This document shows, piece after piece, positions 1,126 through 35,121 of a stretch of 64,000 nucleotides of DNA. Position numbers and translations under genes: made by a program. The stretch spans positions 62,001-126,000 of the IMG/VR virus record IMGVR_UViG_3300040801_002079; one strand, written 5' to 3'. Each line of letters begins with the position of its first letter. The stretch's first letter is position 1. The notes under the pieces were generated by a model, which was not told the DNA's origin, searched no databases, and was given only the letters and a program-made list of their open reading frames with translations.

Positions 1126-2183
1126 TACAAATCTCCGTGGTTTGTACTATGAGTACATTATACATTACTCAGCGGATTTTTGCAACTCCCTTACCATGCG
1201 AAAGTTCTTATCTTCCATTTTGAGCAGGGCTTCACGATGATAAGAGGAACCGTCAATAGCACGTTGATGAACAAATGCTGCTGCTTCCAAATCTGTGTTG
1301 AATTCGGTATCCTCATCCCACCGCTGCAAGTCATACCATCCGTTAGGAATGTAGTGACTTCCCTCACAGCATGAAATGCACCATCCTTCTTTCCGTGCTT
1401 GGGTATCGTCAAAACCTTTCATTTTGTCTTTCCTGTGATAAAATAGGCAAGGGGTCCTTCAGCATGTAGATGCTTCAGGTCATCCTCATCAAGAGGAGTA
1501 AGAGGATTATAGCACAAATGGTGGTATTTTGCAACACACCACCGTGTGAAACGATAGCGTGATCCCACCCAGAATAGAACCCCACTAGTAATATAGTGGA
1601 TTTTTTGCAAGAATGTTATCATCTTCTTTGAACTCCTGTGCCCAGTCTTGTTCATCGGCTTCGATAACGTCATCCCACCCATGGAGGTGTGCATGAAGTT
1701 CTGCTTGTTTACGGATAGAATCCATGTCGAGATTGTCATCATCAATGTCAACAGTTTTCTTCTTGATGGTGGTTTCCATCTTGTAGTAAGTCATTTTCAT
1801 TTTTCTTTGTAGTCCCCTACAGAAATGTTTGCTCGTGGCGTGTGGTCCATGTCAACAATGTAATCAGCTAACCGTTTTGACATGTCTTTCAACTCAAACC
1901 GTGCAACGCGAAAATCACTTCGAAGATTTTCCAACACAACTTCAATGTCAGCAATCAGTGCGGCAGCATCCGGATTATTAGATGCGTAGGCTTGTACTTG
2001 ACATTCACCGACTCGGTGCCATATGGTAGATAACTCGTTGGTATAAACAAACTCAGGACCTGTTAAGTCCAAGTAGAGTTCAATCTCCAGAAGGAGGTAG
2101 CGCAGATTGACGGGCAACAGTGCTGCTGCTTTATCAATGGTTTCTTGTGGATAATCAATCATGTGATGACTATAGCACAGGTT

Positions 2184-2453
2184 TTATTTTTTATCAAGGT
2201 TTCCTAGACCGGAACCAGCAATTTTACCACCAATGCGTCTTACGACACGATCCACAACAGTTCCTTTGTTAAGGGCATTGACATCACCCAACACTTTATT
2301 GGCACCAAGAAGGAGTTCACGTAATGAATTGATACCAGATTTGGCATTTTTACGTTTACCCTTATGGGTCTTGGATTGATAAGGTGTTCTCATGGGTTTT
2401 GCCTTGTAAGGCTTTCTACCCGTTTTTGCTCTGTATGGAGTTCTCATGCTCAT
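2184..2453 (-). CDS. Small very basic late protein with repeated (M)RTPY motifs
   Basis: TATAAATA at 2459-2466, 5 nt before ATG 2453; Lys/Arg-rich; MRTPY occurs twice. Confidence 0.65.
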   Translation of the reverse strand: MSMRTPYRAKTGRKPYKAKPMRTPYQSKTHKGKRKNAKSGINSLRELLLGANKVLGDVNALNKGTVVDRVVRRIGGKIAGSGLGNLDKK

Positions 2454-3428
2454 GATACTATTTATACGCTGCAAGCAGTTCCTCTAAATTATCGACATCT
2501 ACTGTAGTGTCAAGTGGCTCATAATCCAGAACAAGTTCGTCAATGTACTCCTCATTCACATCTGGAATCTCTTTATACCATGAATCTCCGTGTCTGTGTT
2601 CCATGTCCAGAACGTTAACAACACGTTCCATGAACTGAAAGGCTTCTTCTTCAGTGGATGCACACCACTTGAAGATGGGATAAGGATCAGCGAAAATACC
2701 GCTGCTTTTGTAAAGTGTGAGAGTGACTAGGAACATTGCTCTTCCTTTAATTCGATGATACCCTTATTATACCATTCCAGAAGGAAAGTGTAAAGTTCGG
2801 GGGATGCGGGCACTGATTCCCATCCGGGTTCAAGGTTCATGAACCCCTTATAGTATGACTCTTTATCCTGTGTTACTTCATTGGTCTCACGGTTAATGTA
2901 AATTGGAATAATTGTACCATACCGACGATTTTCAATGATGGGATTGTTGAGCAGAATACAAAGCACTTCAGCTTCAAATCCTGCATAACGTCCCAGTGTT
3001 ACATCCCCACCTTTCTTCCATACACGAAGATTAAGATCGGGGCGACACCACTGCATATAGTTTGCAGCATATAGTTTCTGAAACTTAAACCCCTGCTTCT
3101 TCAGCTTGGAGTAATCACCATTAAAGCGAATGTATCGTTTCTTCATCATGGTAGCATCTATCGTGCTAACATGTGTGCATGGAGTGCACTGCACACGGGA
3201 TAAAAATAGGAGTTTTCCAAAACCGTGATGTAATCAGGTCCATCATCACCGTAACGAACGAGGTAATCATAACGTGAACCTTCACAAGTACGATACGCAT
3301 CCATGATGCAATTTTCACGCGGGTCCAAGAATGAACCAATGTACTTGCACTTGTTGCAATCATGGATGTAATGTGACATGTTCTTTCTCCGTGGATGATG
3401 GAGACATTATAACATAGTTAAAGGGTTA

Positions 3429-3542
3429 GAGCAAGATGGGTGTCGCACCCACATTTTCACTAACTATACTGGGAAACCTCATTATAAGGGTTGCAACCAT
3501 TCCCAGACGCTTCGTTGACTAGTATTGAAGCTTACATTGCTC
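3429..3542 (-). ncRNA. Candidate tRNA-like RNA (cloverleaf with enlarged loops)
   Basis: GAGCAA/UUGCUC closing stem, GCUUC/GAAGC arm, CUGGGAA/UUCCCAG arm, T-arm-like GUGGG-UGCGACA-CCCAU; no standard anticodon loop. Confidence 0.5.
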
Positions 3543-3545
3543 ATT

Positions 3546-4912: not shown

Positions 4913-5373
4913 GCTGCTTCCTTCAATTCAAAGGTTTGAAAGTAGAAGTCACCTTCAACCGTCAGGACACCACGGTCCTGAAGGATTTGGGTAAGTGCGT
5001 CAAAATGCTCGTTACCACCCTTCCAGCAGTACCGCAGATAACCGAAGTCATCACGGGGATCGGCATTACGCAGATATTCCTCTACGTCACGCAGAGCAGA
5101 TTCACTAACTTCAAGGAGTTCATAACCCTGATAAACGTGCTCATAGTATTCATTGTAGTCACCCAGACCATACTTGCTGTTATCACGAACCAGCAGTTCA
5201 TAGTCCTTGGGGGACATGTCGGTAACTTCCGACAGAGAAAGTTCTGCGACCACAACTTCATCACCACCCTTGTTCTTCCAATACTGGGGGCATTCACCTT
5301 CACCGTCCCAATCGTGGGCACCGTAGTTCTCGCGCACTTGATAGAAAGCTACTACGATGAAAGATGCGTTCAT
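4909..5373 (-). CDS. Conserved hypothetical phage protein (ENYGAHDWDG.GECPQYWK.KGG motif)
   Basis: 154 aa ORF behind a CCACGGAG module; motif recalled from T4-like phage hypotheticals. Confidence 0.7.
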   Translation of the reverse strand: MNASFIVVAFYQVRENYGAHDWDGEGECPQYWKNKGGDEVVVAELSLSEVTDMSPKDYELLVRDNSKYGLGDYNEYYEHVYQGYELLEVSESALRDVEEYLRNADPRDDFGYLRYCWKGGNEHFDALTQILQDRGVLTVEGDFYFQTFELKEAA

Positions 5374-6226
5374 GTTGTTCTCCGTGGGTTCGTTCAGTTG
5401 ATAAGTACATTATACCAACTTACGGGGAAAAGTCAAGTCATTGCGGTATTATAAATCAGAATTGATCCAATCACTGTCATGGGAACAAACAATAATGCTC
5501 TCACCAATTTAACCCCAATTGATGCACGATCATCGTTTAGAATAAGGTCCACCACTGATATGAAAAACAGAATGGTGCTGGCGATAAGGTAGAATTTCAA
5601 CATTATTCACTATCCTCCAGATAACCGTCACAGTAGTTATAACCAATCACATCCTCAACCAGTCCTGCTCTAAACAACTTGAACTGGTAGTCCATGTAGT
5701 GGTAGTCTTTCCATCCCATGTAAATAACTGCAAGCAGCACTAAGATGATAAATTCAAGGATGCCTCTTTTCCAAACTTCTTTCGTGTGTAGTCCAAAACC
5801 CATTTTAACCCCATGCGGTAGATACTAAACTGGTAGAATGATACCATACCACAACTGTAACCAAATGTCAAGCACTAAAGAGTTCTGCTACCTTCTCCCG
5901 GCACTTGATGCGTTTCAACACTTCCTTTTTGGGAAGAAATTCAACATTAGGTTCATGGTATCCATCCCCATACGGAAGATGCAACAGGAATGAACGCACA
6001 CCTGAACCAACAGGACCTTCAACCATCATGTACTGTGCGTATCCGTCAGCAACGGGTTCCTGAAAGATTTTACCACTGTTCTTACCAGTGTACCCCTGTT
6101 CCTGTAACCATTCACGAATGGATTCACGGTGAAGTTCCTCGTCTTTCCCCCATTCCTCAAAAGTCTGATTAATGTAATCAGGCTCGGGAATGGTGGCTTC
6201 AAGTTCTTCGGGTAAGGAATAGATTT

Positions 6227-6742
6227 TCATGCTACACTCTCCATCATGTAATCCGCAGACACATGTGCTTGTGCGCGGCAGAAACCAAGATCATCATAAC
6301 CCCAACAGGAGTCGATGGGTTCTCCGTGCTCGTCAGTAATGATATAACCGTAAGCTTCACCACGAAGGTACTTGTCATAGGTATCCACTTCGACGGACAG
6401 ATGGGCTTTCACCTTCTCAATAAGTTCATCGGTAACCGTGGTCACACCATACTCTTTGCGAATGTCATCAAGGGACACGTAGATGTAACCCACCATTCCA
6501 GAATCCCATGGGCAACTGAACGGTTCCGTGCTCATGGTGATACCACTATGGTCGTACAAGTACAGGGGAAGATAGATGTAATCTTCTTCCGGTGGGGGCG
6601 CATCCTTGTCTCCAAGATCATAACGATTGTGGAGACAGAACATGGTCCCCAAGTTATCATCTTCGCGGGGGTTCATGGGTTCATCGTCGTAATACAGACT
6701 GATAACCATGTCGTGATATTCGTGGGTTTCAAAAGGTTCCAT
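6227..6742 (-). CDS. Conserved hypothetical protein (LPLYLYDHSG...WDSGxVGYIY family)
   Basis: Motif recalled from phage/ICE hypotheticals; early module upstream. Confidence 0.7.
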   Translation of the reverse strand: MEPFETHEYHDMVISLYYDDEPMNPREDDNLGTMFCLHNRYDLGDKDAPPPEEDYIYLPLYLYDHSGITMSTEPFSCPWDSGMVGYIYVSLDDIRKEYGVTTVTDELIEKVKAHLSVEVDTYDKYLRGEAYGYIITDEHGEPIDSCWGYDDLGFCRAQAHVSADYMMESVA

Positions 6743-6842
6743 CAAACTGTTCCGTGGTTTCAATGTAGGGATATTATAACAGATTGTAAGGAAGAAGTAA
6801 AGTGGTGGGCCGTGTAGGGATCGAACCTACAACCTACCGATT

Positions 6843-7612
6843 CACGTTTGTGTGCATTTCTACACTCCGTGGACTATATCACCACCCTCGTCATTAACGT
6901 TAGGGTGCGGGTCGCTCTAGCTGGTCATTAAGGGGACTTTACCCCTCCAGTAGTCTCTGCACCTTCCTAGAGTGTACTCTAGGCTTGGCTCAAGGTTTTC
7001 ATAGTAACCCATACTTTCTTGCCCATTTTCGTGCTCCATTGTCGCTGACATTATATTTCCTTCCTATGGCTAACCATGAAAGGTGATTCATGTCTTGCTT
7101 CAATTCGCCCTTAGTGGGCTTTGTTTTCCCTCTTTGCTGCTGGTATTTTAACTCTTTATACTTACCAGCACATTCTTTCGAACAGGTGTGCTTCTGCTTT
7201 GCCTGTAGAGTTTGAAAACAAATCTCACAGTATGTCGGTTCGGTTACCTTAGAGTTCCCTGAATTCAACCCGTTCCTTTCATAACTTTCGTGTATGAAGG
7301 CACCAGTATCAATCCAGTTATGTATTTTAACATGGTCTCCCCGACTAAGAACAATGAGATTCTCACTCCTGTTATTAGATCGGTTACAATCAAGATGATG
7401 AACAACTTCATTACTTTCTAGCTGTCTACCTAGATTGGATTCCACGACAAGAATGTGTTCGTAAACCCATCCCTTCCAGTTATCACAATCCATACTTGAT
7501 TGATAATCAGGTCTATACAACAACCTGTAACCATTTAAATACCGAACTGTCTTTTTACTTGTATCCATATGACTATTTATATCATATTCGAACCAAAGAT
7601 ACAAGTTTTTTG
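6843..7612 (-). mobile_element. Group I intron (IC3-like) in the tRNA anticodon loop, carrying an HNH gene
   Basis: Inserted after exon U, ends in G; P (GGGTTGAATTCAGGGAACTC), Q (AACCTTGAGCCAAG), R (GTGCAGAGACTA) and S (GATATAGTCC) elements present. Confidence 0.92.
6999..7568 (-). CDS. Intron-encoded HNH homing endonuclease with C-terminal Zn-finger and HTH
   Basis: YEHILV...EVVHHLDCNRSNN..ENL...H...H; CEIC..CSKEC; WLAIGRKYNVSDNGARKW; TATAAATA at 7574-7581. Confidence 0.9.
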   Translation of the reverse strand: MDTSKKTVRYLNGYRLLYRPDYQSSMDCDNWKGWVYEHILVVESNLGRQLESNEVVHHLDCNRSNNRSENLIVLSRGDHVKIHNWIDTGAFIHESYERNGLNSGNSKVTEPTYCEICFQTLQAKQKHTCSKECAGKYKELKYQQQRGKTKPTKGELKQDMNHLSWLAIGRKYNVSDNGARKWARKYGLL

Positions 7613-7902: not shown

Positions 7903-8256
7903 TTAGGAAGTGGAGAAGGAGAGACCCATCTTGCGAACCTGTGCGTCGATGGCGGGTTCACTGCGCTTCATCTTCTTTGCAACTTCCGCACGGCTAAGAC
8001 CACCAAGAACAAGAGAAGCAATCTGCTTGTTCATTGCACCCGTATAGCGAACATACGAATTCTCAGCAGTGGAGGGGGAGCGAGTGGCTTTCTTGCGATC
8101 CCACTTGCGGCGAACCAACTCTTCCTTCAACTGGTAGACCAGTGCACGATCCGCATCAGATGCGAAACGCTCTACGTAGCGCTCTACCTGCTTCTCGGAG
8201 TTGACCAGTGCGGGGGCACGACCATCGGGAAAGATAATCATAAAACGTTTTTTCAT
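7903..8256 (-). CDS. Putative DNA-binding protein with C-terminal HTH
   Basis: GLSRAEVAKKMKRSEPAIDAQVRKMGL. Confidence 0.55.
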   Translation of the reverse strand: MKKRFMIIFPDGRAPALVNSEKQVERYVERFASDADRALVYQLKEELVRRKWDRKKATRSPSTAENSYVRYTGAMNKQIASLVLGGLSRAEVAKKMKRSEPAIDAQVRKMGLSFSTS

Positions 8257-8607
8257 GCTATTTACTCCGTGTAGTAAATGATTTGTGGTGTGCTGATTTC
8301 GGCCTGTGTTCCTAATCTCAGCGTGGGTATATACTAACAAAAGTTAGATGTTTTGTCAAGCTATGAAATGTAATTATCGGGGTCTAAACCCATCATTCCT
8401 CTGAGTTCACGAATGTGATATGCACCAACTGCAAGTTCAAACACATAAACAAGTTCTTCTTGAGTGAATTTACCCAAGTCAAGTTCAAACAATGTCCCAG
8501 CGTTACCAGAAACTTCCTGTATCCAGCGCTTCTGTTTCAATAAATCATCGTCTTTAAGAGCAGGAAGATACTTCTCTTCTAACCGTTTCTGCATTAATGA
8601 ACATGCG

Positions 8608-9513
8608 TCATTCATTGATAATTTCCTTGATTTTCCGCAGTTTATCGGCAGCAACCTGTTCGCTACCTTCCAAGTTGAAGTAGGCTGAGAGTGACCCATA
8701 GCGGGCTTCCAAGCAACTCATCAACAGAGGTTTTAGTTTATCATACTGTGGCAGCAGGGGCAAGGTGCTGTTAATATAAAGCGTATCCAGATCGGCTTGA
8801 CGCTTCTCAAACCATGATTCCAACTGCTCCAGAGTCCACTCACCGTTACGAACATCCTTCAGGAGTTCACGATTGGCTTCCAGATCAAGATCACCCGTTG
8901 AGAGCACCATTTCACACTGTTGAACCAGTCTTACGACATGATAGGCAAATTTGACATCATATCCAAACTTTGCAATAGTGTCTTTACGTTTACCAACAGG
9001 GTCTTTAGTGCGAAGCTTACGCAACTGGCTGTATGCATACCCTGACAGTTTCTTCTGGATACCACGATGAAGGAACAATCTACGGTTCTCACGCATAATG
9101 TCCCCAACCTCGTCAGAATGGACTACACACCGTTCAGGGACGAACAGGGAGTCGATCATGTTAGGATTGTTATCCGCACACAGCTTGAAGTAGTTGACGA
9201 TATTGTAAAGGGCAATGTCATATTCCTTACCCGTGTCCTCGTCAATGATGTGATGCTTTTGAACAACATCAATCACTTGGGGCTGAGGACCGAAACCGGG
9301 AATGTGACCAGCAGCATGAGGGAACACCATGTCAATGGGTGGAACAAATGCACCGTAGACATCGACATCAGAACCCATGTTAGAGACACCATAGGCAAAT
9401 GATCCCATGATGACCTCGTAACACGTTTCTTTAACAAACGGCTTCCACGGGGGCAGGAGTTCTTTCTTCTCCAGCTTCCGTACAATGCTTCCTCTGTCTT
9501 TTCCTGATGACAT
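8608..9513 (-). CDS. Pol-beta superfamily nucleotidyltransferase (RlaP/Nuc-transf type)
   Basis: GSFAYG....SDVDVYG, NPN, GYDVKFAYHVVRL and L.DVRNG motifs. Confidence 0.88.
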   Translation of the reverse strand: MSSGKDRGSIVRKLEKKELLPPWKPFVKETCYEVIMGSFAYGVSNMGSDVDVYGAFVPPIDMVFPHAAGHIPGFGPQPQVIDVVQKHHIIDEDTGKEYDIALYNIVNYFKLCADNNPNMIDSLFVPERCVVHSDEVGDIMRENRRLFLHRGIQKKLSGYAYSQLRKLRTKDPVGKRKDTIAKFGYDVKFAYHVVRLVQQCEMVLSTGDLDLEANRELLKDVRNGEWTLEQLESWFEKRQADLDTLYINSTLPLLPQYDKLKPLLMSCLEARYGSLSAYFNLEGSEQVAADKLRKIKEIINE

Positions 9514-12500
9514 GGTTATCTCCGTGGTTGATGGAGATATTATAACACAACACTAAGTGTTATGCAACGGAACAATCTGCTTCTATTCTATCATCCATTG
9601 ATCGAATTTCAATGTCCCACACTGAGCAATCATGTGCTTCTGCATATTCTTCAGGGGAACCAAAGCGACATTGATCTTCTCTACAATCTCCGTTAAAATT
9701 CCACGGATGATAGTGATCGCAGATTCCACATTCGAAAATGATATGCATGTTTTACTCCTGATCGTCACCATCAGTGCGTTTCATCTTCGGCTTACTAACT
9801 GATGCTTTGGCGGCACCACGAGCAAGACTGCGTGGAATACCACGTTCAATCAGTTGCTTCAGTTTCTTGCGAAAGATCGGCTGGCGCTGATCCCATTCGT
9901 ATTCCGCAGATGCGCGGGGCTGTGCTGTATCTTTCATTTTATTTCCTCAATCGAATTCCAATGTTTTCAAGCGTTTTCTTTTTCCATGCACGAACCGCAT
10001 CTTCGTTCATTCTGCGAGTCGTAACCTGAAAAGGAAAGTTAAGTACACCTTCTTCCTCTGCATTGGACAGGGCTTCCAGAATATCCTCGGCTTCCTGTTC
10101 GTGGCAAACGGTGATGGTCATTTCAATCATGTTCTTTCTCCGTGGTTGATGGAGATATTATAGCACAGTGGATTTAGTTATTCAAGCTTGTCTGGGATTT
10201 CATCCGGGATTTGTTCTAACAGCACTTTCCATCTTCTGAGAAGTCTTCTAAACTTCTGAACGTCAAACTGTCCTTGTGTTATTTCAAATACGATGGGATC
10301 ATTGGTGGGATTCTTTCTTGATTTCATCATACCTTCAACTTGATAAAGTAGTTGGTCTAATTTCTCTATGAGGTAAAATGCCTGTTGCTGTTCTTCTGTG
10401 TACGCCATAGATGTATTTATCGCGCACCTTTACATTTATTCATTATTCATGTCAATTGCTTCATCAATGTCATCAGCATCACCTCTCCAGATGTGACGCA
10501 TGTATCCCACTTCGCTATAATCATTAGCTGGGTGCTCATAATGTCCGTTATCCGTCCAATAAGCAATGCCCAGAATGTCCCACTCTTTTGGAAAGGGGAT
10601 GTGATTACTGTTGCAAAACTTTTCCAAACGGTTCAAATCGAACTTGGTAATGTTACTATATTCTTCTGGAAGGGTATCGGGGTAAGGAATACCATCACCT
10701 CGAACAAGGATTTCACCGAATGTTGAGTGAATGCGGATCATGCATGACCCTCTGCAAACCACGGGCTGGTCATTTCATCAAAACGACCATGACGGGCATG
10801 ATTCTCATACTCGGCTTCAATACCCAGACGGGATTCAAGAGAGTGAGAGAAGAAGTCATGGAAGTACCAGTGATCTTCGTTGATGGAACCAACTTCCTCA
10901 ACCCGCTGGGCAAGACGCTTTGCGGCTTCCAGACCGTCCTTCGACCAACGCATCGCAGAACCGGAGTCCCTGAAGGAAACATTGTGAACCAGAGTGCGAC
11001 CATCTTCCAGATCGGCGCAGACAAACAGGATGGTGTCGAAGTACTGGGTATCTTCGATGAACTCACCCTCTACGACCCAATCGCTGATGTAAACATTGAT
11101 GACCTTGATCCGTGACATTTGTTTGCTCCGTGGGTGTTTCCGATTTATGAGTCTATTATAACACAACCACCGGTAGTGTCAAGGGAGTTTCCCAAGATTT
11201 TCTGTGATATAATCCCACTTCATCTTCTCTGCAATTTCCCTCAACCAGAAGTGGGGGGCTTTACCATCAAGAGCATTGTTCATGTGATCAATCATCTCAG
11301 CGGCAATCCATCCAATATGCTCTTCGGGGGGATACTCACCTTTTTCACCCTCTTCCCGTGCTAACTCACGAAGTGAATCCATTACAAATTCCGGAGTCAG
11401 AAATTCATCGTTTCCTGTGAAGATTTTCATCAGATCAGTACTCCAGTTCAGGAATGTAACCAACGTGGGCTTCCAACTCAGCATAGACCTTCATGTAGTA
11501 GCTGTACTTACGCTGGGCTTCAGCATTGCTGATTTCACCGTCACAGTGCAGGTTCTCGGGGCTGAGGTCACCCTCAAGGTTGTACACGATCTTTTCCGCG
11601 TCATCACGGGAAAGGGGGAACGTCATCAGGGGACGCTTCGACAGTTCATTCCAGAAGTTCAGGCGTTCAACGTAGTTCTTCAGGTTCTGCATTGACTTTC
11701 TCCGTGGTTGATGGAATCATTATACCACAGTCATTCGTCAAAGTAAAACAATGCTCCTGCATAACCATCATCTTCTTCATTTGTGAATGGGCCTGCGCCC
11801 AGCACATGAGTGTGTGGCTTTTGTTTGGAACTGTGCTCGGTATACACAACAAGTTCCCCATCAGCATTGACACCCATTTCAATATCCCACTCACCCAGCG
11901 TCATTTTGATAACTTCCGGCATCAGTCTACTCCGTATGCTTCCTTACATGGCAATACATCAGAAGTGGTTTCTCGTTGACCGTTAAAGGGATTATAAAAG
12001 TGGTCAATTGAATCAAGAAATGAAGAATCTACCCCCATTATACCACCAGATTCATTATCTTTCCATAATTCCAGTTCAACCAGACCCCCGCTTGTGGGGT
12101 CTATGACTTCAACCGTTGTTATAAATGTATAAGGTTTCATCCTGTTCCATGTCCTTCAATCATGCTGTTGCACCCTTTACTTCGGGGGTGAACAATGCGT
12201 CACGATCCCACATCAGTTTGAGTTCTTCAACTTCACTCAGAAACTGATCCCACATCCATCCATCAATCTCAATGATTTCAGGGTTATACAGATTGTCAAT
12301 GTTAACAAACTGGGCATCACCCAAATCACTATCCTCACTACGGAGATACGTCTTACCGTTCTTCGCTTCAAGGATCATGTTCCAGTATCCATTTTCATAC
12401 ACCCCTATGGATACCACACCAAGACACCCGATATTCAGGGTCTTTTCCCTATGGTCAATCATTAAATTTCCCCTTTAAACACTCAATTCCTCTGCGGCTT

Positions 12501-13851
12501 TCAGTTCTTCGACAACACACCGTGCATCTTCAAACGAGATGTACCTGTCGTTCTTGTCATCGTAAATGAATTCCTCGTCATCTGCATCAAGGAGTTCACT
12601 CTTGATAGATTCCAAGCAATTCAGCACCGTTTCCAGCACATCAGCTTCCGATGAATATTGTGACATTCTTTTCATTTGCTTTCTCCGTGGTCAATGCGTA
12701 TATTATATCACAAATGCATACCCAGTACAACAGCAGAACTTACTGCAAGCACACTGGACATGGTGCGAAAGAGTTTCGGTGAACCCTCAATAGAGGGCAC
12801 AAAGATGGAAAAGAACATTCCAAACAACATTGAACCCAACAGCATCCATTCAAGAGTATTCATAGCATTGTTGTCCTTCTGTTTGATTTCGGAAAGAATA
12901 CCAGTTCTGTGACAGGAAAGCAAATTTCATCTTTCCAATCGGGCTTTACACCGTTAATAATGACAGAACGGTTCTGCAACCAGCGGCGTTTTTCACTGTT
13001 GGAAGCTACAACTGCTTGGTTCCCATTGAATTGCATGGGAACATGGGGCAGGGAACATAAGAACTTCCAAGCTTGCATGACTATCTCCGTGGTTTTGTTT
13101 ATTATACCACGAAGATTAATTCATATCAACTCGTTCAACACTCAGAGTGTCTTGTTCAAAATCTTCAGGCATACCGTCATTGAGAACACTGAAAATCTGA
13201 TGTGCTTCTTCAACAGCTTCATCTTCCGTTTGAGCATTCACTTCGTATGTCTTGGTTACTATTGCTTGGATTGTTACCCTGTAGACATTTTCCATGCTGA
13301 AGTTCAATCCACGGTTCACCCAGAGCACGGGGAAATCGGGATCAGCGTTAACAGACTGTTCTTCTGCATGTTCAGCATCTTCTGCTTCACAGATGAAATA
13401 ATCCCACTCACCTTCGTCCTCACGAATGACTACAAAGGTTTTGAGTCCCTGATCCAAATGTTGATCGGCAATATAATTAATCATTATCATCCTCCAGTGC
13501 TGCGAGTAGATTGTTCAGAACAGGTTTCGGAACGGCATATCCGTGTGTGTCGCAAATGCTCTGCAATCCACCCTGCAATGTAGCCAGCTTCGCTTCCAGT
13601 TCGTCATTCTTCTTCGCTAACTGGTCGCATTCACCTTGATAAAACTCTTGCCAGTAGACTTCTGCTTTTTCTAGTTCAGCGATGCGGTCTGCATCCTCTT
13701 TACGAATCCCGCAAAGCCGACACCGTGGAGCACTCCATGCTCCTCGTACCCAATCGTGATTGCATTCACTCATTCCTGCTTCTCCTTTATGCACCGCTTT
13801 CTCCATTCGTATGAATCCAGTTCGTACTGCGTGTACTTCTGGTTGTATCGG

Positions 13852-14954: not shown

Positions 14955-15131
14955 TTATACGTCTTTTATCTGATGCTTCCCACAACGTTCACACGTTCTC
15001 TCATGTGCTAGCACTTTATCAATCACCACTTTCTCCGGTTCACCACACCATGCATAATGTATGGTCTTTTTGAACAACTGGGGGGCAGAAAACTTTCCCC
15101 ACTTGTGGATTCCAAATGTACAAAGGTTCAT
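14955..15131 (-). CDS. Small Cys/His protein (C..GIHKW...C.RCG)
   Basis: 58 aa, hand-translated, below the ORF track cutoff; early-type promoter upstream. Confidence 0.55.
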   Translation of the reverse strand: MNLCTFGIHKWGKFSAPQLFKKTIHYAWCGEPEKVVIDKVLAHERTCERCGKHQIKDV

Positions 15132-25000: not shown

Positions 25001-25084
25001 TTTCTCAATTGCTTCTTCAAGAACGTGATCCATGATGTTCTCCGTGATTTGATGGACACATAATACCAAAAGAGGGAATGCTTG

Positions 25085-25417
25085 TCAAGCGACAAGCATC
25101 CCGGTCATCGGATTGAAGGTGTAGCGAACACCCTTCAGGGAGCAGGACTTGACCTGTTCCAGATTGATCCGGCGAAATGCACCCTTGGTATCACCCGTGC
25201 GCTCCACCACGTTCATGTCGTACACGGTGAGGACGTTATTGCGCTTGTCCTCTGCTTCCCGGTGACCCTTGGGCAGAACACCCTTGACACCCTTCTTAAC
25301 GTGCATCCGGGCATTCATGGTGCGCAGGGAACCGTCAGTCTTCTTGACGAAGGTGACACCAAAGACCTGATCGGAGTTCCGAACCCGCTCGACAAATTCC
25401 TGAATCGTCATTTCCAT
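25085..25417 (-). CDS. SH3/WYL-like beta-barrel protein
   Basis: FGVTFVKKTDGSLRTM.A...VYDM.....FRRINL pattern. Confidence 0.6.
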   Translation of the reverse strand: MEMTIQEFVERVRNSDQVFGVTFVKKTDGSLRTMNARMHVKKGVKGVLPKGHREAEDKRNNVLTVYDMNVVERTGDTKGAFRRINLEQVKSCSLKGVRYTFNPMTGMLVA

Positions 25418-25495
25418 TGTAGTGCTCCCGTGGTTGATTTCCTTAATGTCTGGTAGACATTGTACACGAATATGGGATAGGTGTCAACCCCTTTG

Positions 25496-29759: not shown

Positions 29760-32158
29760 TTGTTTTCTCCTGTGTTGATACTAACGTTAGCGTAGTCAAT
29801 CACCGCTTTCTGGAACTCTTCTTTCTCACCTGAATACCACGGGGAGGAAACGTGATCCAGAAGTTTTAATTGACTGTTTACATTATCCACCATTTCGGTG
29901 TATTTGTCAACCGTTTCGGCAACAAAATCCGAGGGTTCTGGCAGATCAGAGTCACCCATGAAGCGCACCAATGCTTGAATTGCTTCGAACTTGGCTGACG
30001 GGTAACGCTTGTTAAAAAGTTTCTTAAAGCGAATCAGGGTGCGAACAGGATGGTTCTCATCCAAACGATCAAACTCTTCTTCGCTTACGGATTCGATTCG
30101 GGAAACAACTTTGGATTCACGAATCTTTTCACGAACCGCAATCAGGTTATTACGATTAACCAAATCAACCGGAACTTCCACATTCTCTCGCAGTTCCTTG
30201 ATCAAGTCCTGAATAGGCTTGAAACCGTATGTCAGGGCTTTATCGTACCGTGCGCGAGACAGGGCAAGGATAACCGTATTATCGTGGTCAAAATCCATCT
30301 CACTGTTCAGGTAGTGCTGGATGAATTGCAGATCGTCATATTCCAGACCTTCGATTTCGCACCTGTGCGTTTGGATAATGTACGCATCAGTATCAATCTT
30401 GGTCAGCGGAGTGTAGACATCCGTCCAGTACTTAGTAGAACCAAAACTGTGCTTCTCATGCTTGAACATCCGAGCAACAGGCGTGGTATTCGAACCGTAT
30501 GCAACCGTGCTGATGTTCTTGGGCAGTTCGATACTGGACAGGTAAACCAGTGTCAGATTATCATCGACAACCTCTTCCAGCATTTCCAGTGCATCATCAT
30601 CGTAGGTATCCAGAGTCAGCACTTCGCTACCTTGCAGACCATTTTCTTCTAAGTAGAACTTGATCTTTTTCAGGAACGAGTAACTATTGTCCCTGATGAA
30701 AACAATCCTGCTCTCAGTAGGGTTAATGAAAACATCACTGTTCAGGCGCGAGGTTTTACCATTGTGCTCATTGTACTCTGACCAGCGCAGTTTGTACTGG
30801 CGGTAGTGACCGTGGTTGGCAAGCTTCGTTTCCACGTTACCCTGATCATCTTCAATGTCAATCCATTTCAGGGAAGTGTAGTCACCCCAACCCGTGAGAG
30901 GCAGAGAGATAGCATTCTTGCTGTAACGGAAATTCGGATTTCCGACCATCTTGCGAACACGCTTCGATGACAGGTCAACAATGCTGAAATTGCGATTCAG
31001 GAAAACGGCTTTCTCATAGTCCGTCATAGAATCATCGTCAATGGAATCCAGCACGTAACCCGTGTACTCATCCATCGCTTCACGTTCACGTTCCTGAATC
31101 TTGGCAATCGTATCATCGTCGTACTGCAAATCCTCACGGGAGGCAGTAACCATGACTTCACCAATGTCAAACCGTGCAACCAGATTCTGCTGGAACAGGT
31201 TATTGCTCAGGTAACGAATGTTGTACGCATTATTACCAACGCAAGCGAATCCCTTGTTCCACGAATCACTGTCCAAATCCTCTTCGAACAGGATGAAGTG
31301 TTCACCCTTGTAAGCAACCTTCGGGAACTCCACTTCATCGTTCAACACGACAGGCAGGGGATCAAAGTACTTCAACTGATCCACAATCGCTTTCTTGAAC
31401 GTATGGTAGTCATCGGGAGCAACGGCAATCTTCACTTCCAGACCATTGTCCTCATCAGTATCAACCGTCATCATCAGATTGATTTGCGGCATACCGTGTT
31501 CGTTGGTCAGAATGTTGTAGACCCGCTTGATTCCATTGTACCGATTAGTAACAATGAAGTTATCGGTGTAGGCAAGCGGAGTCTTTGAACCGAGTCCAAA
31601 GGCACCCGTGAAGTCATTCGACTGTTCCTTCGTAGAACGAAAGTAGGTGCTGTAGAGAACCAACGTATCGTCAAACTCGACTGCAACGTCCTTACCGGAG
31701 AAGTCACCGGGAACACGCAGAACCGTTTGCTTGTTGGTATTGTCATACAGGATGGCACCAATGTTAACCGTCTCAGTTTCACCGAGAACGACCATGTTGA
31801 TACCTTCGATTTCCTTGCGGATATCACCGTCAATGAAGATGGTGGATTCACCTTCGTGCTCATTGACAATGTTAGCATTGTGCTTGAAGTAGCGCAGACC
31901 CGTACCGAAATCCTTCACTTCAAAATGAGGATCAAAGGCAGACGGGCAGGATACTTCGAACGGTACTTCCGGCTTACCAGCGGCGATATGTGCATCGTAA
32001 GCATTGGAGCACAGTTCACGAACAATCGTGGATTCGATTTCGGAGTACATTCCACTGGACAGAACGTTAAAGGCTTTACCGTTCATATCAATGCTGAAAT
32101 CGACATTGATGCTCATTCCAGCAGACTGTACAGACTTGGCTTGTGTATTGAGTTTCAT
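29756..32158 (-). CDS. rIIA: rIIA protein (GHKL ATPase N-domain)
   Basis: KAFNVLSSGMY...VRELCSNAYDAH, DFGTGL, STK..SN.FTGAFGLGSKTP.AYTD; ATGA-coupled to rIIB. Confidence 0.95.
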   Translation of the reverse strand: MKLNTQAKSVQSAGMSINVDFSIDMNGKAFNVLSSGMYSEIESTIVRELCSNAYDAHIAAGKPEVPFEVSCPSAFDPHFEVKDFGTGLRYFKHNANIVNEHEGESTIFIDGDIRKEIEGINMVVLGETETVNIGAILYDNTNKQTVLRVPGDFSGKDVAVEFDDTLVLYSTYFRSTKEQSNDFTGAFGLGSKTPLAYTDNFIVTNRYNGIKRVYNILTNEHGMPQINLMMTVDTDEDNGLEVKIAVAPDDYHTFKKAIVDQLKYFDPLPVVLNDEVEFPKVAYKGEHFILFEEDLDSDSWNKGFACVGNNAYNIRYLSNNLFQQNLVARFDIGEVMVTASREDLQYDDDTIAKIQEREREAMDEYTGYVLDSIDDDSMTDYEKAVFLNRNFSIVDLSSKRVRKMVGNPNFRYSKNAISLPLTGWGDYTSLKWIDIEDDQGNVETKLANHGHYRQYKLRWSEYNEHNGKTSRLNSDVFINPTESRIVFIRDNSYSFLKKIKFYLEENGLQGSEVLTLDTYDDDALEMLEEVVDDNLTLVYLSSIELPKNISTVAYGSNTTPVARMFKHEKHSFGSTKYWTDVYTPLTKIDTDAYIIQTHRCEIEGLEYDDLQFIQHYLNSEMDFDHDNTVILALSRARYDKALTYGFKPIQDLIKELRENVEVPVDLVNRNNLIAVREKIRESKVVSRIESVSEEEFDRLDENHPVRTLIRFKKLFNKRYPSAKFEAIQALVRFMGDSDLPEPSDFVAETVDKYTEMVDNVNSQLKLLDHVSSPWYSGEKEEFQKAVIDYANVSINTGENK

Positions 32159-33291
32159 ATGACCTTCCGTGTAAAGGTTAATCTCTAAATGTGGATACAT
32201 TATAGGTGATATCGTATCCAATGTCAAGTGCTTAGTGAAACTTTTTTTAAACTAGATTTCGGGCTTCCATTTCATCGATGATGTTCTGGTACAACTGGAA
32301 CACCTCTGGGGGCGGAGTACATTCTTCACACATAGAGTTTAGGGTGCCTTCCACACTCTTGTGCATCATTTGTAAATCTTCATCCGCAAGTTCTGATAGT
32401 ATTATAGGACTACCTTTCTGCATTGTCAAGGTACTCGTTTCCAGAGTCAACCAATAAGTTTACCACATTTTTACTGATCATGTCAAATATCGTACTGAAC
32501 TCATCTTCCTTGGTTTGCTCTGGTACAGCCGCAAGAGATGGATTACATAGGGCAAACTCCAGAAGCATACGAGATTGAACAGCAGCAGCATCCTCAGCGT
32601 GTTTTCGCATGTTGGCTCGTATGGCATCAACATCCGCTTTATGTTCGCTTAGACGTTGCTCCAGAAATAATTCGAATTGTTGTACTTTCTTATCCCAAGG
32701 GTTCATAATGTTATAGTTATCCTTTCAGTACTCTTATTTATAGAAATCAGGACAACAAGTTAACTTTGGGAACAAACTCAATCATATCCATGACAGTGTA
32801 TGCTGTATCCCATTCTTCTGGCATTGGGAGAGTCGGGATCACTTCATCGATGTACAGACCGACATCTGGACGATAGGGTTCAAAGTTAACATGATCCTGA
32901 ATGTCAGAAACAATATCATCAGCGTGATCCTCAGAGGTTGCTTCCACAATAAAGAAGGCAGGGACAATGTAACGTTTCGTAGACATCATAGTTTCCTCTA
33001 GATGACTTCACCGTCAAACACTTCCAGATCACGAATGAGCATGTTATCCATGGTCCAGTTGGTCATCAGGGAATTAACGTATTCAATGACTTTGGCATTG
33101 ACTGAGTTTAGATCAACAGTGCTATAGATGCAGCGGCTTGATCCCGAATCGGGGCGGCACATTACAAGGTAATCCAGATCACTAATGCGATAGCTTGCAA
33201 TGAGAGGTCCTTCATGCTGGTACTTCTCAAAGTGAAGCTTGGCTAGCATTTCATTCGTGCTGGGCATAATGTTCTCCGTGTAAAGAAAAAG

Positions 33292-33453
33292 TGGTGGTCA
33301 GGTAGGCTTCGAACCCTACATAGGACAATGTTGTCAAACGGTCTTGTGTTTCTGTTTCGGACGCATCCTACTACAGAAAGCTTTTCCTGTTTTCCTGTGA
33401 ATGTACCGGGGCATATCTTTGGGCAAATGATACATTCATTAAACTACTGACCA
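33292..33453 (-). ncRNA. tRNA-mimic RNA (acceptor and T arm with about 115 nt of unrelated internal structure)
   Basis: UGGUCAG-UAG start, GUAGG-GUUCGAAG-CCUAC-CUGACCA-CCA end; internal GAAUGUAUC/GGUACAUUC and UUUCUGU/ACAGAAA stems. Confidence 0.65.
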
Positions 33454-35121
33454 CTCCGATTCATGTACTATGTGGAAATCAATTGGCAAAATGCCTAGCA
33501 CATGAACCCAACGTTCTGGTGATGCTCCCCCGCCCTGTGCATGGGGTTAAAAAGGGAGCACCACACTCCATTCAATCAACTCGGGTGACAAACACCTCAC
33601 CGTCCTTGATAAAGGACATTATAGCATACTGGTACATATATGCAACCTCTCCATCACGTTCCCACTTCACAAGCGGAAACAGATCGGGGTCTTCAGGGTA
33701 ACGGTAGACACCATTGGCATCAACTTCACCACCCTTCATTTCAAACAAACCGAATCCATAGTTGTCATCAACCTGCTTCTGAAATGAATCTTCAGTCGTG
33801 ACATCAATCCAGTACGGAATCAATCCACATGCGTCCACCAGATACTCAGGTTCAACGTCACTGAAATGATCAGTCGGGTCAACCTCAAACCGATGCTGGG
33901 GATGAATAGACATAGTTGACATACTGTGTACTCCGTGTTTGTTTAACGATGAAACAATGTTACCACAGTGAAATCAGGATTGCAACCCTGCGGCACGTTT
34001 ATACAGATTGTACCCTGCTTTGTGATCGTTTGCATCACCATCACTTGACCATGTAAAATCATCATTAACCGCTTCCAATGCAAACAGGGTAGCGACCACG
34101 ATTTCATCATAGGGTCTACGGGCAGTCTTACAGAATTCTCCTCTGGCACCATCCCGGTAAACCACGAAGGTTTCATAACCATCGTCATCGACACCGTTGA
34201 AGCGAATCCTGTCTCCATCAATCATCGGAGGTTTGGGAACATCATATTCAAACTGTACCGGGACGCTTGAAGCATTGATGATCTTACCAGCAAGCTCAGT
34301 AGCTTTCTTCCACTGCTCGGGGGTAAACCCACGGTGACTCCAATAATGCGTGTAACCCATGTTAGTGCTCCTGTGTGTAATGAGAGAGGTCAGTATACTC
34401 CACTTCACGGGAAAATACAACCGCAATCAGTTCATCCAGATAACGAATATGCTTAATGAACCATGCAACATCCGATTCATTACCGGCTTGCTTATGTTCA
34501 ATAAGTCGTTCGACACAATGCATTTGATCCCTTCGTAAAACTCTCCAGAGATTCTCGGTATCAGTAGCATCCAGTTCGAATTCAAATTTCATCCAAACTA
34601 TCCGTATATGAATTAACGATAATAGCGATAATTTCTAAATGCATGTCAACCATCCATGGCTCAGGGGCATCTTTTATTTCTTCACCTACCGGCTCAACGA
34701 AGATATTACATCCATCAGTGAATTCAATAAAGAGATTAAGGTCTGATTCCATTTCAACTGTCTTAATCGTTTTACCTATCAAGTGCTGAAGGTCTGATTC
34801 GTGTGTTACTATTTTATGCATGGTTATATACCCATTTAGTTACAAGTTACTATCGAACCGTCCGTATTATACTTCACAGACGCACCAGAGGTGAACTGGA
34901 GGTACTGAACACCGTCTACACAGATTTCACTGTACCCTGTAAACTTGGCACCAACCCGTTCCATCTGACCACAACCGGACATTGCTACAGCAACAATGAT
35001 AATAGACGGTAGGAACATGAGCACCGGGAGGATACGACTAATGTATTTGTTTTCTTCTTGCATGACATTCTCCATTCAAATGTTGCGACATTATAACATG
35101 GAAAAAAGTTAGGGTAAAGGC

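What the first reader, a model, noticed from the sequence alone, without database searches (positions are those of the whole stretch)
1133..33940. Invariant CCACGGAG leader on early genes: gene-cassette repeat and possible CsrA/RsmA site
Seen: more than 20 early units use CACGGAG rather than AGGAG. The copies at 9520 and 10138 are near-identical over ~30 bp. Known: repeated promoter modules mediate gene shuffling in T4-like phages (PeSL-type), and CsrA/RsmA binds CANGGA over the RBS. Inference: early genes are exchangeable cassettes whose translation may be co-regulated by one RNA-binding protein.
Basis: partly seen in the sequence, partly recalled or inferred. Interest (0 to 1): 0.62.

Follow-up and report, generated by a model that had tools for sequence, protein, structure and literature searches.

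The report
Shared early promoter-leader module in jumbo phage
About two dozen early transcription units of an uncultured T4-like jumbo phage start with the same short leader ending in (C)CACGGAG, whose GGAG is the ribosome-binding site. The extra CAC is a clade-specific signature that ribosome pairing does not explain, carried on promoter modules that get shuffled between genes.

Summary
CCACGGAG occurs 17 times in the window (0.9 expected), always on the minus strand. CACGGAG occurs 25 times on that strand between 1133 and 33937. Nineteen exact copies and five one-base variants lie 6-8 nt upstream of an ATG.

The motif is almost confined to the first gene after a sigma70-type promoter. It heads 19 of 26 promoter-proximal ORFs in this cluster and 0 of 37 elsewhere in the 317-kb genome. 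Internal and late genes use (T/A)AGGAG, so the host anti-SD does not explain the CAC.

Five related metagenomic phage fragments carry the same CACGG leader: four have CCACGGAG at 3-11 copies against about 0.3-0.5 expected, and L188 has (A/T)CACGG(A/G). More distant relatives, including XacN1, lack it. Similar promoter-leader modules head unrelated genes, and orthologous genes carry different modules. That fits PeSL-type mobile promoter cassettes, here without the stem-loop.

The CAC is probably an RNA-level class signal on immediate-early leaders, working like the T4 RegA or RegB target sites. No factor was identified. The motif fits the CsrA core CANGGA, but it shows no hairpin presentation, no second site and no flanking consensus, and the phage has no csrA. 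CsrA remains a minority rival. Verdict: a new variant of a known kind, of moderate interest.

The parts
1123..1185 (-). Promoter-leader module: TTGCAA-17-TATAAT, CCACGGAG at 1133-1140, ATG at 1125. Heads a 179-aa ORF (586-1125).
3377..3434 (-). Module: TGTTATAAT, then GTCTCCATCATC, then CCACGGAG at 3387-3394, ATG at 3379. Heads a 73-aa ORF.
5371..5436 (-). Module: TTGACT-16-TGGTATAAT, a 22-nt gap, CCACGGAG at 5380-5387, ATG at 5373. Heads a 154-aa ORF.
6740..6801 (-). Module with the variant CCACGGAA (6750-6757), ATG at 6742. Heads a 171-aa ORF.
8254..8359 (-). Longer leader: promoter at 8359-8331, ACACGGAG (CACGGAG at 8265-8271), ATG at 8256. Heads a 117-aa ORF.
9511..9568 (-). Module with CCACGGAG at 9520-9527, ATG at 9513. 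Heads the RlaP-type nucleotidyltransferase (8608-9513). It is 31 nt near-identical to the module at 10128-10185.
10128..10185 (-). Module with CCACGGAG at 10138-10145, ATG at 10130. Heads a 63-aa ORF.
11116..11182 (-). Module: TTGACA-16-TGTTATAAT, a 22-nt gap, CCACGGAG at 11126-11133, ATG at 11118. Heads a 126-aa ORF. A second CACGGAT lies 10 nt after the ATG.
11690..11747 (-). Module with CCACGGAG at 11700-11707, ATG at 11692. Heads an 85-aa ORF.
12673..12730 (-). Module with CCACGGAG at 12683-12690, ATG at 12675. Heads a 66-aa ORF.
13076..13129 (-). Module with only 9 nt between the -10 and the motif. CCACGGAG at 13085-13092, ATG at 13078. Heads a 72-aa ORF.
15129..15191 (-). Module with the tandem variant ACACGGACACGGAT (15138-15150), ATG at 15131. 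Heads a 58-aa ORF.
15865..15922 (-). Module: TTGACA-17-TATAAT, CCACGGAG at 15875-15882, ATG at 15867. Heads a 66-aa ORF.
16118..16176 (-). Module with CCACGGAG at 16128-16135, ATG at 16120. Heads a 69-aa ORF.
16738..16791 (-). Module with a 9-nt gap, CCACGGAG at 16747-16754, ATG at 16740. Heads the Ogg-HhH-like 192-aa ORF.
17428..17499 (-). Module with the variant ACACGGAT (17440-17446), ATG at 17430. Heads a 74-aa ORF.
18732..18791 (-). Module with CCACGGAG at 18743-18750, ATG at 18734. Heads a 74-aa ORF.
20496..20562 (-). Module with CCACGGAG at 20506-20513, ATG at 20498. Heads the SprT-like 220-aa ORF. The leader AATAGCTAACCACGGAG is conserved in L103, is recognisable in L100, and recurs before a different gene in L104.
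23686..23749 (-). Module with CCACGGAG at 23696-23703, ATG at 23688. Heads a 106-aa ORF (phrog_6045). The same leader heads unrelated genes in L104 and L105.
25031..25088 (-). Module with TCACGGAG (CACGGAG at 25040-25046), ATG at 25033. Heads a 58-aa ORF.
25415..25487 (-). Module with a 5' hairpin (GTCTACCAGAC) and the variant CCACGGGAG, ATG at 25417.
25085..25417 (-). Stand-alone WYL_2 / Sm-like SH3-barrel protein of 110 aa. It is a speculative candidate binder of single-stranded RNA and is not shown to be linked to the motif.
32156..32227 (-). rIIA promoter and leader: TTGACA-17-TATAAT, then ACCTTTACACGGAAGG, ATG at 32158. The leader is conserved in L100, L101 and L103.
33265..33281 (-). ACACGGAG leader (CACGGAG at 33274-33280), ATG at 33267, 89-aa ORF. 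It lies directly after a tRNA-like 3' end, with no clear promoter.
33920..33985 (-). Module: TTGCAA-17-TGGTAACAT, ACACGGAG (CACGGAG at 33931-33937), ATG at 33922. Heads a 116-aa ORF.
6865..6872 (-). CCACGGAG copy that is not a leader. It lies near the 3' end of a group I intron in a split tRNA gene.
22496..22503 (-). CCACGGAG copy with no promoter and no ORF start. It is not a leader.

Best explanation
What it is. (C)CACGGAG is the conserved 3' end, the leader and ribosome-binding site, of a family of about 24 sigma70-type early promoter-leader modules. These modules head the transcription units of the hyperplastic early region of an uncultured 317-kb T4-like jumbo phage related to XacN1.

How expression would run (inferred from consensus geometry). 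Host RNA polymerase starts about 7 nt after an extended -10 (TGnTATAAT). This gives a very short, A/C-rich, essentially unstructured leader, typically 5'-AUCAAC-CACGGAG-N6-7-AUG. GGAG is the Shine-Dalgarno.

The CAC. It does not pair with the anti-SD. It marks only the promoter-proximal cistron of this one gene cluster, and it is conserved in five related phage fragments.

Module mobility. The modules behave like PeSL-type mobile regulatory cassettes. The same module is found before unrelated genes, and orthologous genes carry different modules. The break in homology lies at or just inside the start codon.

Most likely role of the CAC (inferred, not shown). It extends the SD into a class-specific RNA recognition element. 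A trans-acting factor could then treat all immediate-early 5' cistrons alike, by translational repression or by cleavage that inactivates the leader, as T4 RegA and RegB do at early initiation regions. The factor is unidentified.
For: Enrichment and strand bias.

Position. The motif lies a fixed 6-8 nt before the ATG, but a variable 9-27 nt after the -10. It therefore tracks translation start, not promoter geometry.

Promoter-proximal class. With promoters predicted without reference to the motif, 19 of 26 promoter-proximal ORFs in the cluster carry CACGGA, against 0 of 37 elsewhere in the genome. Within the cluster the association has odds ratio 23 and p = 6e-7. Two promoters that drive tRNAs lack the motif.

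Not the anti-SD. Internal genes use TAAGGAG, AAGGAG or GGAGG. The major capsid gene and other large late genes use (T/A)AGGAG.

Selection rather than recent copying. Leader bases next to the motif vary in sequence and length. The CACGG leader recurs in five relatives whose rIIA, RlaP or WYL_2 proteins are only 52-69% identical. CCACGGAG counts are L187 11, L104 6, L105 5 and L103 3, against about 0.3-0.5 expected in each, and almost all are promoter-proximal. L188 has the variant (A/T)CACGG(A/G). L100, L101 and XacN1 have no CCACGGAG copies.

Shuffling. L104_12016 and L105_12788 share a promoter-leader but head unrelated first genes. The W_23688 leader matches the L104_14539 and L105_14723 leaders, yet the W_23688 protein homologue sits behind a SprT-type leader in L104. 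L104_14275 and L105_14476 are 84% identical proteins with different leaders. A 90%-identical RlaP gene (L186) has a completely unrelated upstream region, and homology starts about 20 nt inside the ORF.

Known analogues. PeSLs are defined as a stem-loop, a sigma70 early promoter, an SD and a start codon (PMC4122927). T4 RegB with S1 targets GGAG in early SDs (PMC1702504).
Against: No trans-acting factor was found. RegB, RegA and CsrA profiles give nothing in the genome.

No RNA data exist for this phage. Transcription starts, timing and any cleavage are therefore inferred.

The T4 RegB site carries its information 3' of GGA and none 5' of it (PMC1702504). That is the opposite of what is seen here.

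The motif-rich relatives also have promoter-proximal leaders with TAAGGAG or TAATGGAG, so the CAC is not obligatory.

Related phages use CAC-A-GGAG or CA-rich AAGGA leaders. Part of the signal could therefore be a generic preference for A/C-only leaders, combined with common descent.

The window's modules lack the PeSL stem-loop.
Confidence: 0.5

Rival explanations
1. Host CsrA/RsmA binds CACGGA(G) over the SD of every immediate-early leader. It would either repress or stabilise these mRNAs, or the abundant early leaders would titrate CsrA.
For: The invariant core CACGGA fits the CANGGA core of the RsmE-derived consensus (A/U)CANGGANG(U/A) (PMC6849547). The site overlaps the SD. In relative L188 the base before CAC is A or T, as in that consensus. 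Several leaders carry a second (C)ACGGA nearby, at 11114, 15150 and 17446.
Against: The GGA is not consistently in a hairpin loop and no stem is conserved. A second GGA within 45 nt is not enriched compared with other genes (0.95 against 0.69 per gene, p = 0.13). The base after GGAN is G in only 1 of 21 leaders, and the 5' flank is A or U in only 5 of 21. The phage has no csrA. The host is unknown. Uniform repression of a phage's own early genes has no obvious benefit.
Confidence: 0.12
2. The motif acts only in cis. An A/C-only, structure-free leader with a deliberately minimal 4-bp SD is simply the preferred design for a 5'-proximal cistron on a very short leader. No trans-acting factor reads the CAC.
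For: Leaders are A/C-rich with almost no G upstream of the SD and fold weakly. Relatives without the motif also have CA-rich leaders, such as ATCAACAAGG, ACACAGGAG and CACCACAAGGA. The motif is restricted to first cistrons, which cannot use translational coupling.
Against: A generic A/C preference predicts a mixture of AAA, ACA, CAA and similar triplets before GGAG. Instead CAC precedes the SD in 19 of 26 cases and persists across 52-69%-identical relatives. Thirty-seven other promoter-proximal genes of the same phage do without it. The most highly expressed genes use TAAGGAG.
Confidence: 0.2
3. The motif is a neutral signature of module propagation. The 8-mer is kept alike because the promoter-leader modules descend from one ancestor and homogenise each other by recombination, and the sequence serves at most as micro-homology for cassette exchange.
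For: Module sub-families share 25-31 nt. Modules are demonstrably re-assorted with genes. PeSL elements are thought to spread in this way (PMC2839356, PMC4122927).
Against: The 8-mer is an island of identity. The bases between the -10 and the motif differ in both length (9-27 nt) and sequence, and gene conversion would not leave that pattern. The motif survives in relatives whose -10 variants and flanks have diverged.
Confidence: 0.1
4. The motif acts at the DNA or transcription level. It would be an operator for a phage repressor that blocks early transcription just downstream of the start site, or a promoter-proximal loading site for an antitermination factor, of the nut, boxA or ops type.
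For: The motif is strictly promoter-proximal. Its distance from the promoter is variable, which roadblocks and loading sites tolerate. It is restricted to one regulatory class of sigma70-type promoters.
Against: The fixed 6-8 nt distance to the ATG, and the fact that half of the motif is the SD, point to translation. The two tRNA-driving promoters in the cluster lack the motif. No dyad partner or second half-site was seen.
Confidence: 0.08

Closest known systems
PeSL (promoter-early stem-loop) mobile regulatory cassettes of T4-type phages (Arbiol et al. 2010, PMC2839356; Comeau et al. 2014, PMC4122927)
   Same: Both have a near-consensus sigma70 early promoter, an SD and a start codon at the 3' edge. 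Both occur in many copies in a hyperplastic region full of small ORFans. In both, similar copies flank unrelated genes and are associated with gene replacement between relatives. In relative L187 the -35 even sits in a G5/C5 stem-loop.
   Different: The window's modules show no stem-loop enrichment. The conserved 3' end carries an extra, clade-specific CAC or CCAC before GGAG, which the PeSL descriptions read here do not mention. The phage belongs to a distant jumbo lineage close to XacN1. Exchange was seen here only between relatives diverged to 50-90%, not in near-identical pairs.
T4 RegB/S1 target site at early Shine-Dalgarno sequences, GGAGRAYARAA (Durand et al. 2006, PMC1702504; Uzan and Miller 2010, PMC3014915)
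   Same: Both have GGAG as the SD of early, mostly promoter-proximal cistrons. In both the sequence 3' of GGAG is A-rich and the leader is single-stranded. Both form a class signal that would allow coordinated inactivation of early mRNAs.
   Different: No RegB homologue was found. RegB needs no information 5' of GGA, whereas here the information is 5' (CCAC). Position 7 is not pyrimidine-biased here.
T4 RegA translational operator (reviewed in PMC3014915)
   Same: A short sequence overlapping the initiation region of many early mRNAs would let one protein repress them together.
   Different: No RegA homologue was found. The RegA sites I recall are AU-rich and lie around the AUG (from memory, not checked here). 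RegA targets are not limited to first cistrons.
CsrA/RsmA binding site (A/U)CANGGANG(U/A) (as cited in PMC6849547)
   Same: The core CANGGA is matched exactly, and the site overlaps the SD.
   Different: There is no hairpin-loop presentation, no paired second site, and the flanks do not match. See the membership test.

Membership tests
PeSL-type mobile promoter cassette | Sigma70-like early promoter (-35, about 17 nt, -10) | tested here: met
   21 of 23 scored modules reach at least 9.5 on a -35 / -10 / extended -10 score, and most have TGnTATAAT.
PeSL-type mobile promoter cassette | SD and start codon form the 3' end of the conserved element | tested here: met
   GGAG lies 6-8 nt before the ATG in all modules. 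Homology with L186 breaks about 20 nt inside the ORF.
PeSL-type mobile promoter cassette | Stem-loop (terminator-like) just upstream of the promoter | tested here: not met
   The mean MFE of the 66 nt upstream is -12.1 against -12.8 kcal/mol for random windows (p = 0.75). Few terminator-like sites were found. Relative L187 does have G5-TTGACA-C5 stems.
PeSL-type mobile promoter cassette | Association with gene insertion, deletion or replacement between related phages | tested here: met
   Four cases of re-assortment between module and gene, plus the RlaP upstream replacement. Only diverged relatives were available.
CsrA/RsmA target site | Core A(N)GGA / CANGGA | tested here: met
   CACGGA is present in every aligned leader, which follows from how they were selected. 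It is also present in 19 of 26 independently predicted promoter-proximal leaders.
CsrA/RsmA target site | GGA presented in the loop of a short hairpin, with flanks (A/U)...NG(U/A) | tested here: not met
   There is no consistent hairpin and the unpaired probabilities are scattered. G at the closing position occurs in 1 of 21 leaders, and an A or U 5' flank in 5 of 21.
CsrA/RsmA target site | Two or more sites per target for the dimer | tested here: not met
   GGA counts from the ATG to +45 are 0.95 against 0.69 per gene (p = 0.13). A.GGA is not enriched.
CsrA/RsmA target site | CsrA protein present and binding the RNA | not testable with these tools
   The phage has no csrA. The host is unknown and the source is a microbial mat metagenome.
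T4 RegB/S1 cleavage site | RegB endoribonuclease encoded | tested here: not met
   PF10715 gives no match in six frames of the complete genome.
T4 RegB/S1 cleavage site | GGAG followed by the A-rich 3' consensus RAYARAA in single-stranded RNA | tested here: inconclusive
   Positions 5 and 6 are A in 14 and 13 of 21 leaders, but position 7 is not pyrimidine-biased. The leaders are largely unstructured.
Extended Shine-Dalgarno (anti-SD pairing) | Bases 5' of GGAG complementary to the 16S 3' tail (UAAGGAGG) | tested here: not met
   In CAC only the A can pair, according to the canonical anti-SD (established knowledge). The phage's internal and late genes use (T/A)AGGAG.

The most novel reading that the evidence does not exclude
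CACGGA(G) is a dedicated RNA operator read by a phage-encoded single-strand-binding protein. One speculative candidate is the stand-alone WYL_2 / Sm-like protein at 25085-25417. This protein is itself expressed from a CCACGGGAG leader, and homologues are present in the window phage and in four of the five CACGG-leader relatives sampled (L104, L105, L187, L188). The sampled stretch of L103 lacks it. Together the operator and its reader would form a clade-specific immediate-early translational regulon, analogous to T4 RegA or RegB but unrelated to them.
Probability: 0.12. Interest if true: 0.75.

Novelty: new variant of a known kind. Interest (0 to 1): 0.5.

Why it matters
Early 'host take-over' regions of jumbo phages consist almost entirely of unknown genes, and their regulation is unexplored. 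The 7-8-nt leader signature described here cleanly defines one regulatory class of about 24 transcription units. It is conserved across an uncultured clade and it rides on promoter modules that are swapped between genes.

This has two uses. First, it gives a practical marker for annotating immediate-early units and module boundaries in metagenomic jumbo phages. Second, it poses a concrete, testable question: what reads the CAC? If a dedicated factor exists, it would be a new post-transcriptional control system in phages. If none exists, the case documents how PeSL-like module spread can fix an arbitrary RBS variant across a clade.

Tried and rejected
- Closest phages. Megablast of 5 kb of the region against GenBank phages found nothing. 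A single-protein locus search with rIIA in IMG/VR also found nothing.
- Pattern scan. Scanning IMG/VR for TATAAT-N9-12-CCACGGAG-N5-8-ATG gave 95 single hits, about the number I estimate for chance. No locus had a cluster.
- Distant rIIA loci. Eighty rIIA loci of 40% identity or less from IMG/VR show no motif enrichment.
- Candidate factors. RegB, RegA and CsrA profiles give no match in the genome.
- RNA evidence. No RNA run holds the region. Laying DNA contigs of three runs only re-found the internal repeats and a roughly 95% variant in small pieces, with no usable breakpoints.
- Rfam. It reports only tRNAs and a group I intron.
- Structure and second sites. Hairpin presentation of the GGA and second-site enrichment were both negative. 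An upstream stem-loop was also negative.
- Antisense partner. Outside the cluster CACGGAG occurs at chance level on both strands. The only notable copy is the acceptor stem of the phage tRNA-Pro(UGG), which I regard as coincidence.
- 16S rRNA pairing. From memory, E. coli 16S has CUCCGUG near position 510, which is complementary to the motif. I rejected this as a mechanism. That segment lies on the mRNA-entry side of the ribosome, a 7-mer match somewhere in 1.5 kb is not rare, and the sequence varies among proteobacteria.
- Pause signal. The elemental pause consensus (G-10 Y-1 G+1) is not met, because there is no G at the required upstream position.
- Early proteins. Pfam and PHROG scans of 20 early proteins found no nuclease or known RNA regulator.
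- WYL_2 co-occurrence. It is weakened by a 53% homologue in a phage without the motif (L189).
- Unavailable DNA. The closest relatives, the contigs of P0002 (rIIA 62%) and of P0121 (RlaP 90%, 50 kb), could not be fetched because the sample files were too large.

Full report
**Context**

The window is bases 62001-126000 of a 316,801-bp IMG/VR virus record with direct terminal repeats and 39% GC. It was assembled from a microbial mat metagenome.

The phage encodes a T4-type gp23 capsid protein, rIIA and rIIB, RNA ligase 1 and an RlaP-type nucleotidyltransferase, and 43 tRNAs plus a tmRNA. Its nearest cultured relatives are the Xanthomonas and Stenotrophomonas jumbo phages XacN1, Xoo-sp13, CM1 and RAS14. 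Their capsid proteins are 60-74% identical and their rIIA about 31-34%.

The first 34 kb of the window is a minus-strand cluster of small, mostly unknown genes. Its GC content is 43-48%, against 35-40% further along.

- CCACGGAG occurs 17 times, all on the minus strand, against 0.9 expected.
- CACGGAG occurs 28 times against 3.6 expected, and 25 of these lie on the minus strand between 1133 and 33937.
- Across the whole genome the excess is confined to 61.5-96 kb. Elsewhere the counts are at chance level on both strands.
- Nineteen exact copies lie 6-8 nt before the ATG of a real-looking ORF.
- Five more units carry one-base variants: CACGGAA, CACGGAT, a tandem ACACGGACACGGAT, and CCACGGGAG.
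- Six copies are not leaders. One lies in a group I intron, one has no ORF, and four are inside ORFs or lack a usable start.
- The copies at 9520 and 10138 share 31 nt with one mismatch, running from the extended -10 through GGAGA.

**Anatomy**

Each leader copy lies downstream of a sigma70-type promoter, typically TTGACx, 17 nt, then TGnTATAAT. The distance from the -10 to the motif varies from 9 to 27 nt, with 12 nt the commonest. The distance from GGAG to the ATG is constant.

With a start about 7 nt after the -10, the commonest transcript would begin 5'-AUCAAC-CACGGAG-N6-7-AUG. That start position is inferred from consensus geometry and was not measured. The leader would be about 20 nt long, made almost only of A and C before the SD, and without stable structure.

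**The motif marks a class**

Promoters were predicted without reference to the motif. On that basis 19 of 26 promoter-proximal ORFs on the minus strand of window 1-34,200 carry CACGGA in SD position, and 13 of them carry CCACGGAG. None of 37 promoter-proximal ORFs elsewhere in the genome does.

Within the cluster, the motif goes with being the first gene after a promoter (odds ratio 23, p = 6e-7). Internal genes have TAAGGAG, AAGGAG, GGAGG or AAGGAA. The major capsid gene has TTAAGGAG, and other large late genes have (T/A)AGGAG.

The host therefore has an ordinary anti-SD. By the canonical pairing scheme (established knowledge), CAC leaves a bare 4-bp GGAG duplex.

**Conservation in relatives**

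rIIA homologues of 38-62% identity exist only in metagenomes. RlaP homologues reach 90%. The retrievable fragments divide as follows.

| Locus | Marker used and identity | CCACGGAG copies | Expected |
|---|---|---|---|
| L187 | RlaP 69% | 11 | about 0.5 |
| L104 | rIIA 52% | 6 | about 0.5 |
| L105 | rIIA 52% | 5 | about 0.4 |
| L103 | rIIA 54% | 3 | about 0.3 |
| L100 | rIIA 54% | 0 | about 0.4 |
| L101 | rIIA 47% | 0 | about 0.4 |
| XacN1 | rIIA 34% | 0 | about 1.3 |

- In the four fragments with the motif, nearly all copies lie in promoter-proximal leaders, and always in the orientation of the gene.
- L188 has the variant (A/T)CACGG(A/G) in six promoter-proximal leaders.
- L100 and L101 each keep a CACGGAAGG leader before rIIA, and L100 also has ACACGGAG before its SprT gene. 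Their other leaders, and XacN1's, are CA-rich, for example ACACAGGAG or ATCAACAAGG.
- Eighty more distant rIIA loci from IMG/VR show no enrichment.

The bases between the -10 and the motif differ in length and sequence, and the -10 variants differ between phages. The persistence of the 7-8-mer therefore points to selection on the motif itself, not only to recent duplication.

**Cassette behaviour**

Within the window, near-identical modules head unrelated genes. The two groups are 9513, 10130, 3379 and 11692, and 16740 and 13078.

Between phages, four cases of re-assortment were found.
- L104_12016 and L105_12788 share 27 of 34 upstream bases but have unrelated first genes. L104 has an extra gene inserted right after the leader.
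- The leader of W_23688 matches those of L104_14539 and L105_14723, which are unrelated proteins. The protein homologue of W_23688 in L104 sits behind a leader like that of the SprT gene in the window and in L103.
- L104_14275 and L105_14476 are 84% identical proteins with different leaders.
- The RlaP gene of L186 is 90% identical to the window's. Its upstream region is unrelated, and the homology starts about 20 nt inside the ORF.

The order of the small genes around rIIA also differs between relatives. This is what has been described for PeSL elements of T4-type phages, which are defined as a stem-loop, a sigma70 early promoter, an SD and a start codon (PMC2839356, PMC4122927). The window's modules lack the stem-loop. 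L187 has the -35 hexamer in the loop of a G5/C5 stem.

**What reads the CAC?**

This could not be settled.
- The phage encodes no recognisable RegB, RegA or CsrA.
- T4 RegB with S1 recognises GGAG plus an A-rich 3' stretch and needs nothing 5' of GGA (PMC1702504). Here the sequence after GGAG is A-rich, but the strong information lies 5' of it.
- The CsrA/RsmA consensus is (A/U)CANGGANG(U/A) (PMC6849547), and the core CANGGA is matched. However, the closing G is present in 1 of 21 leaders. The 5' flank is A or U in 5 of 21. The GGA is not consistently in a hairpin loop. A second site is not enriched (p = 0.13).
- A role in promoter geometry is unlikely, given the variable spacing to the -10 and the fixed spacing to the ATG. 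The two tRNA-driving promoters of the cluster also lack the motif.
- No antisense partner was found.

**One lead**

The gene at 25085-25417 encodes a 110-aa stand-alone WYL_2 / Sm-like SH3-barrel protein.
- Fourteen of 23 homologues match PF10902. The window's own copy matches only at E = 0.011, below the family threshold.
- The AlphaFold model has pLDDT 85.
- The best fold matches, all weak, are the WYL domains of PafBC, BrxR and CapW, followed by Lsm and Hfq.
- Homologues are present in the window phage, L104, L105, L187 and L188, all of which have CACGG leaders. In the three of these relatives I examined in detail (L104, L105, L187) it sits behind a CCACGGAG leader itself.
- It is absent from the sampled syntenic stretches of L100, L101 and L103.

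WYL and Sm-like domains bind single-stranded nucleic acids (established knowledge). However, the co-occurrence is confounded by phylogeny, and a 53% homologue sits in a phage without the motif (L189). This is a hypothesis to test, not a finding.

**Verdict**

The cassette inference is largely borne out. The CsrA inference is neither supported beyond the core match nor refuted.

The best-supported account is a PeSL-like family of mobile early promoter-leader modules. Their RBS end carries a clade-specific CAC extension that marks immediate-early first cistrons. The most probable role of that extension is as a common RNA-level recognition element, working like the T4 RegA or RegB targets. A purely cis-acting or historically frozen signature remains a serious alternative.

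Noticed in passing
window 6803-7649 (-): A tRNA gene is split in the anticodon loop by a group I intron of about 770 nt. Rfam RF00028 scores 62 bits at 6850-7320. The intron carries an HNH_3 endonuclease ORF (6999-7568). The anticodon reading (CAU or CUG) depends on the exact splice site. One CCACGGAG copy (6865-6872) lies about 25-30 nt from the intron's 3' end.
   Followed up: partly
window 1-34000 compared with 34000-64000: There is a step in base composition. The early minus-strand cluster has 43-48% GC and the rest of the window 35-40% (genome mean 39%). The relatives rich in the motif are also 46-47% GC.
   Followed up: no
window 25425-25465 (-); genome 57379, 58210, 58876; L104 about 11575-11618; L105 about 12345-12389: A second conserved leader type begins with a 5'-terminal hairpin, GTCT-NNN-AGAC, followed by TTAAGGAAAT or AAAATCGAAAC. 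Orthologous leaders in L104 and L105 keep the stem but have different loops. It may be a 5' stabiliser.
   Followed up: partly
window 25085-25417 (-): A stand-alone WYL_2 / Sm-like SH3-barrel protein of 110 aa with the invariant basic motifs FxVxFxKK and FRRINL. It is present in the window phage, L104, L105, L187 and L188, but also, at 53% identity, in an unrelated phage without the motif (L189). Homologues occur in the jumbo phages SCTP-2, Atu_ph07 and Phosso.
   Followed up: partly
genome C1 complement 237937-238013 (outside the window): The phage tRNA-Pro(UGG) has the acceptor stem CUCCGUG / CACGGAG. Its 3' end, ...ACCACGGAGACCA, shares 10 nt with the leader consensus ACCACGGAGA. With 43 tRNAs, a 7-mer match of this kind has a chance of roughly 0.3% (a post hoc estimate). 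No mechanism is evident.
   Followed up: partly
genome C1 164015-164365 and 207-240 kb (outside the window): The phage encodes a tmRNA with tag peptide ANDSIYDQALAA and a large minus-strand array of tRNA genes. There are 43 tRNAs in all, including one with a CUA anticodon that ARAGORN calls 'Pyl'.
   Followed up: no
L187, e.g. about 4870-4900, 5570-5600, 6255-6285 (+): In this relative the -35 hexamer TTGACA sits in the loop of a G5/C5 stem (GGGGG-TTGACA-CCCCC). This resembles the G(n)-loop-C(n) stem-loops of RB49-type PeSLs, but here the stem overlaps the promoter.
   Followed up: no
window 33281-33330 (-): A tRNA-like 3' end (GGTTCGAAGCCTACCTGACCACCA) lies directly upstream of the ACACGGAG leader of the 89-aa ORF. 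ARAGORN calls no tRNA there. L104 and L105 have the same arrangement. Either the leader's 5' end is made by tRNA-type processing or this is a degenerate tRNA.
   Followed up: no
window 18775-19059 (-): The homologues of this 94-aa ORF in L100 and on the P0002 contig carry a weak precomputed Pfam hit to Ribosomal_L12. The window's own copy gives no Pfam hit at E up to 0.01.
   Followed up: partly
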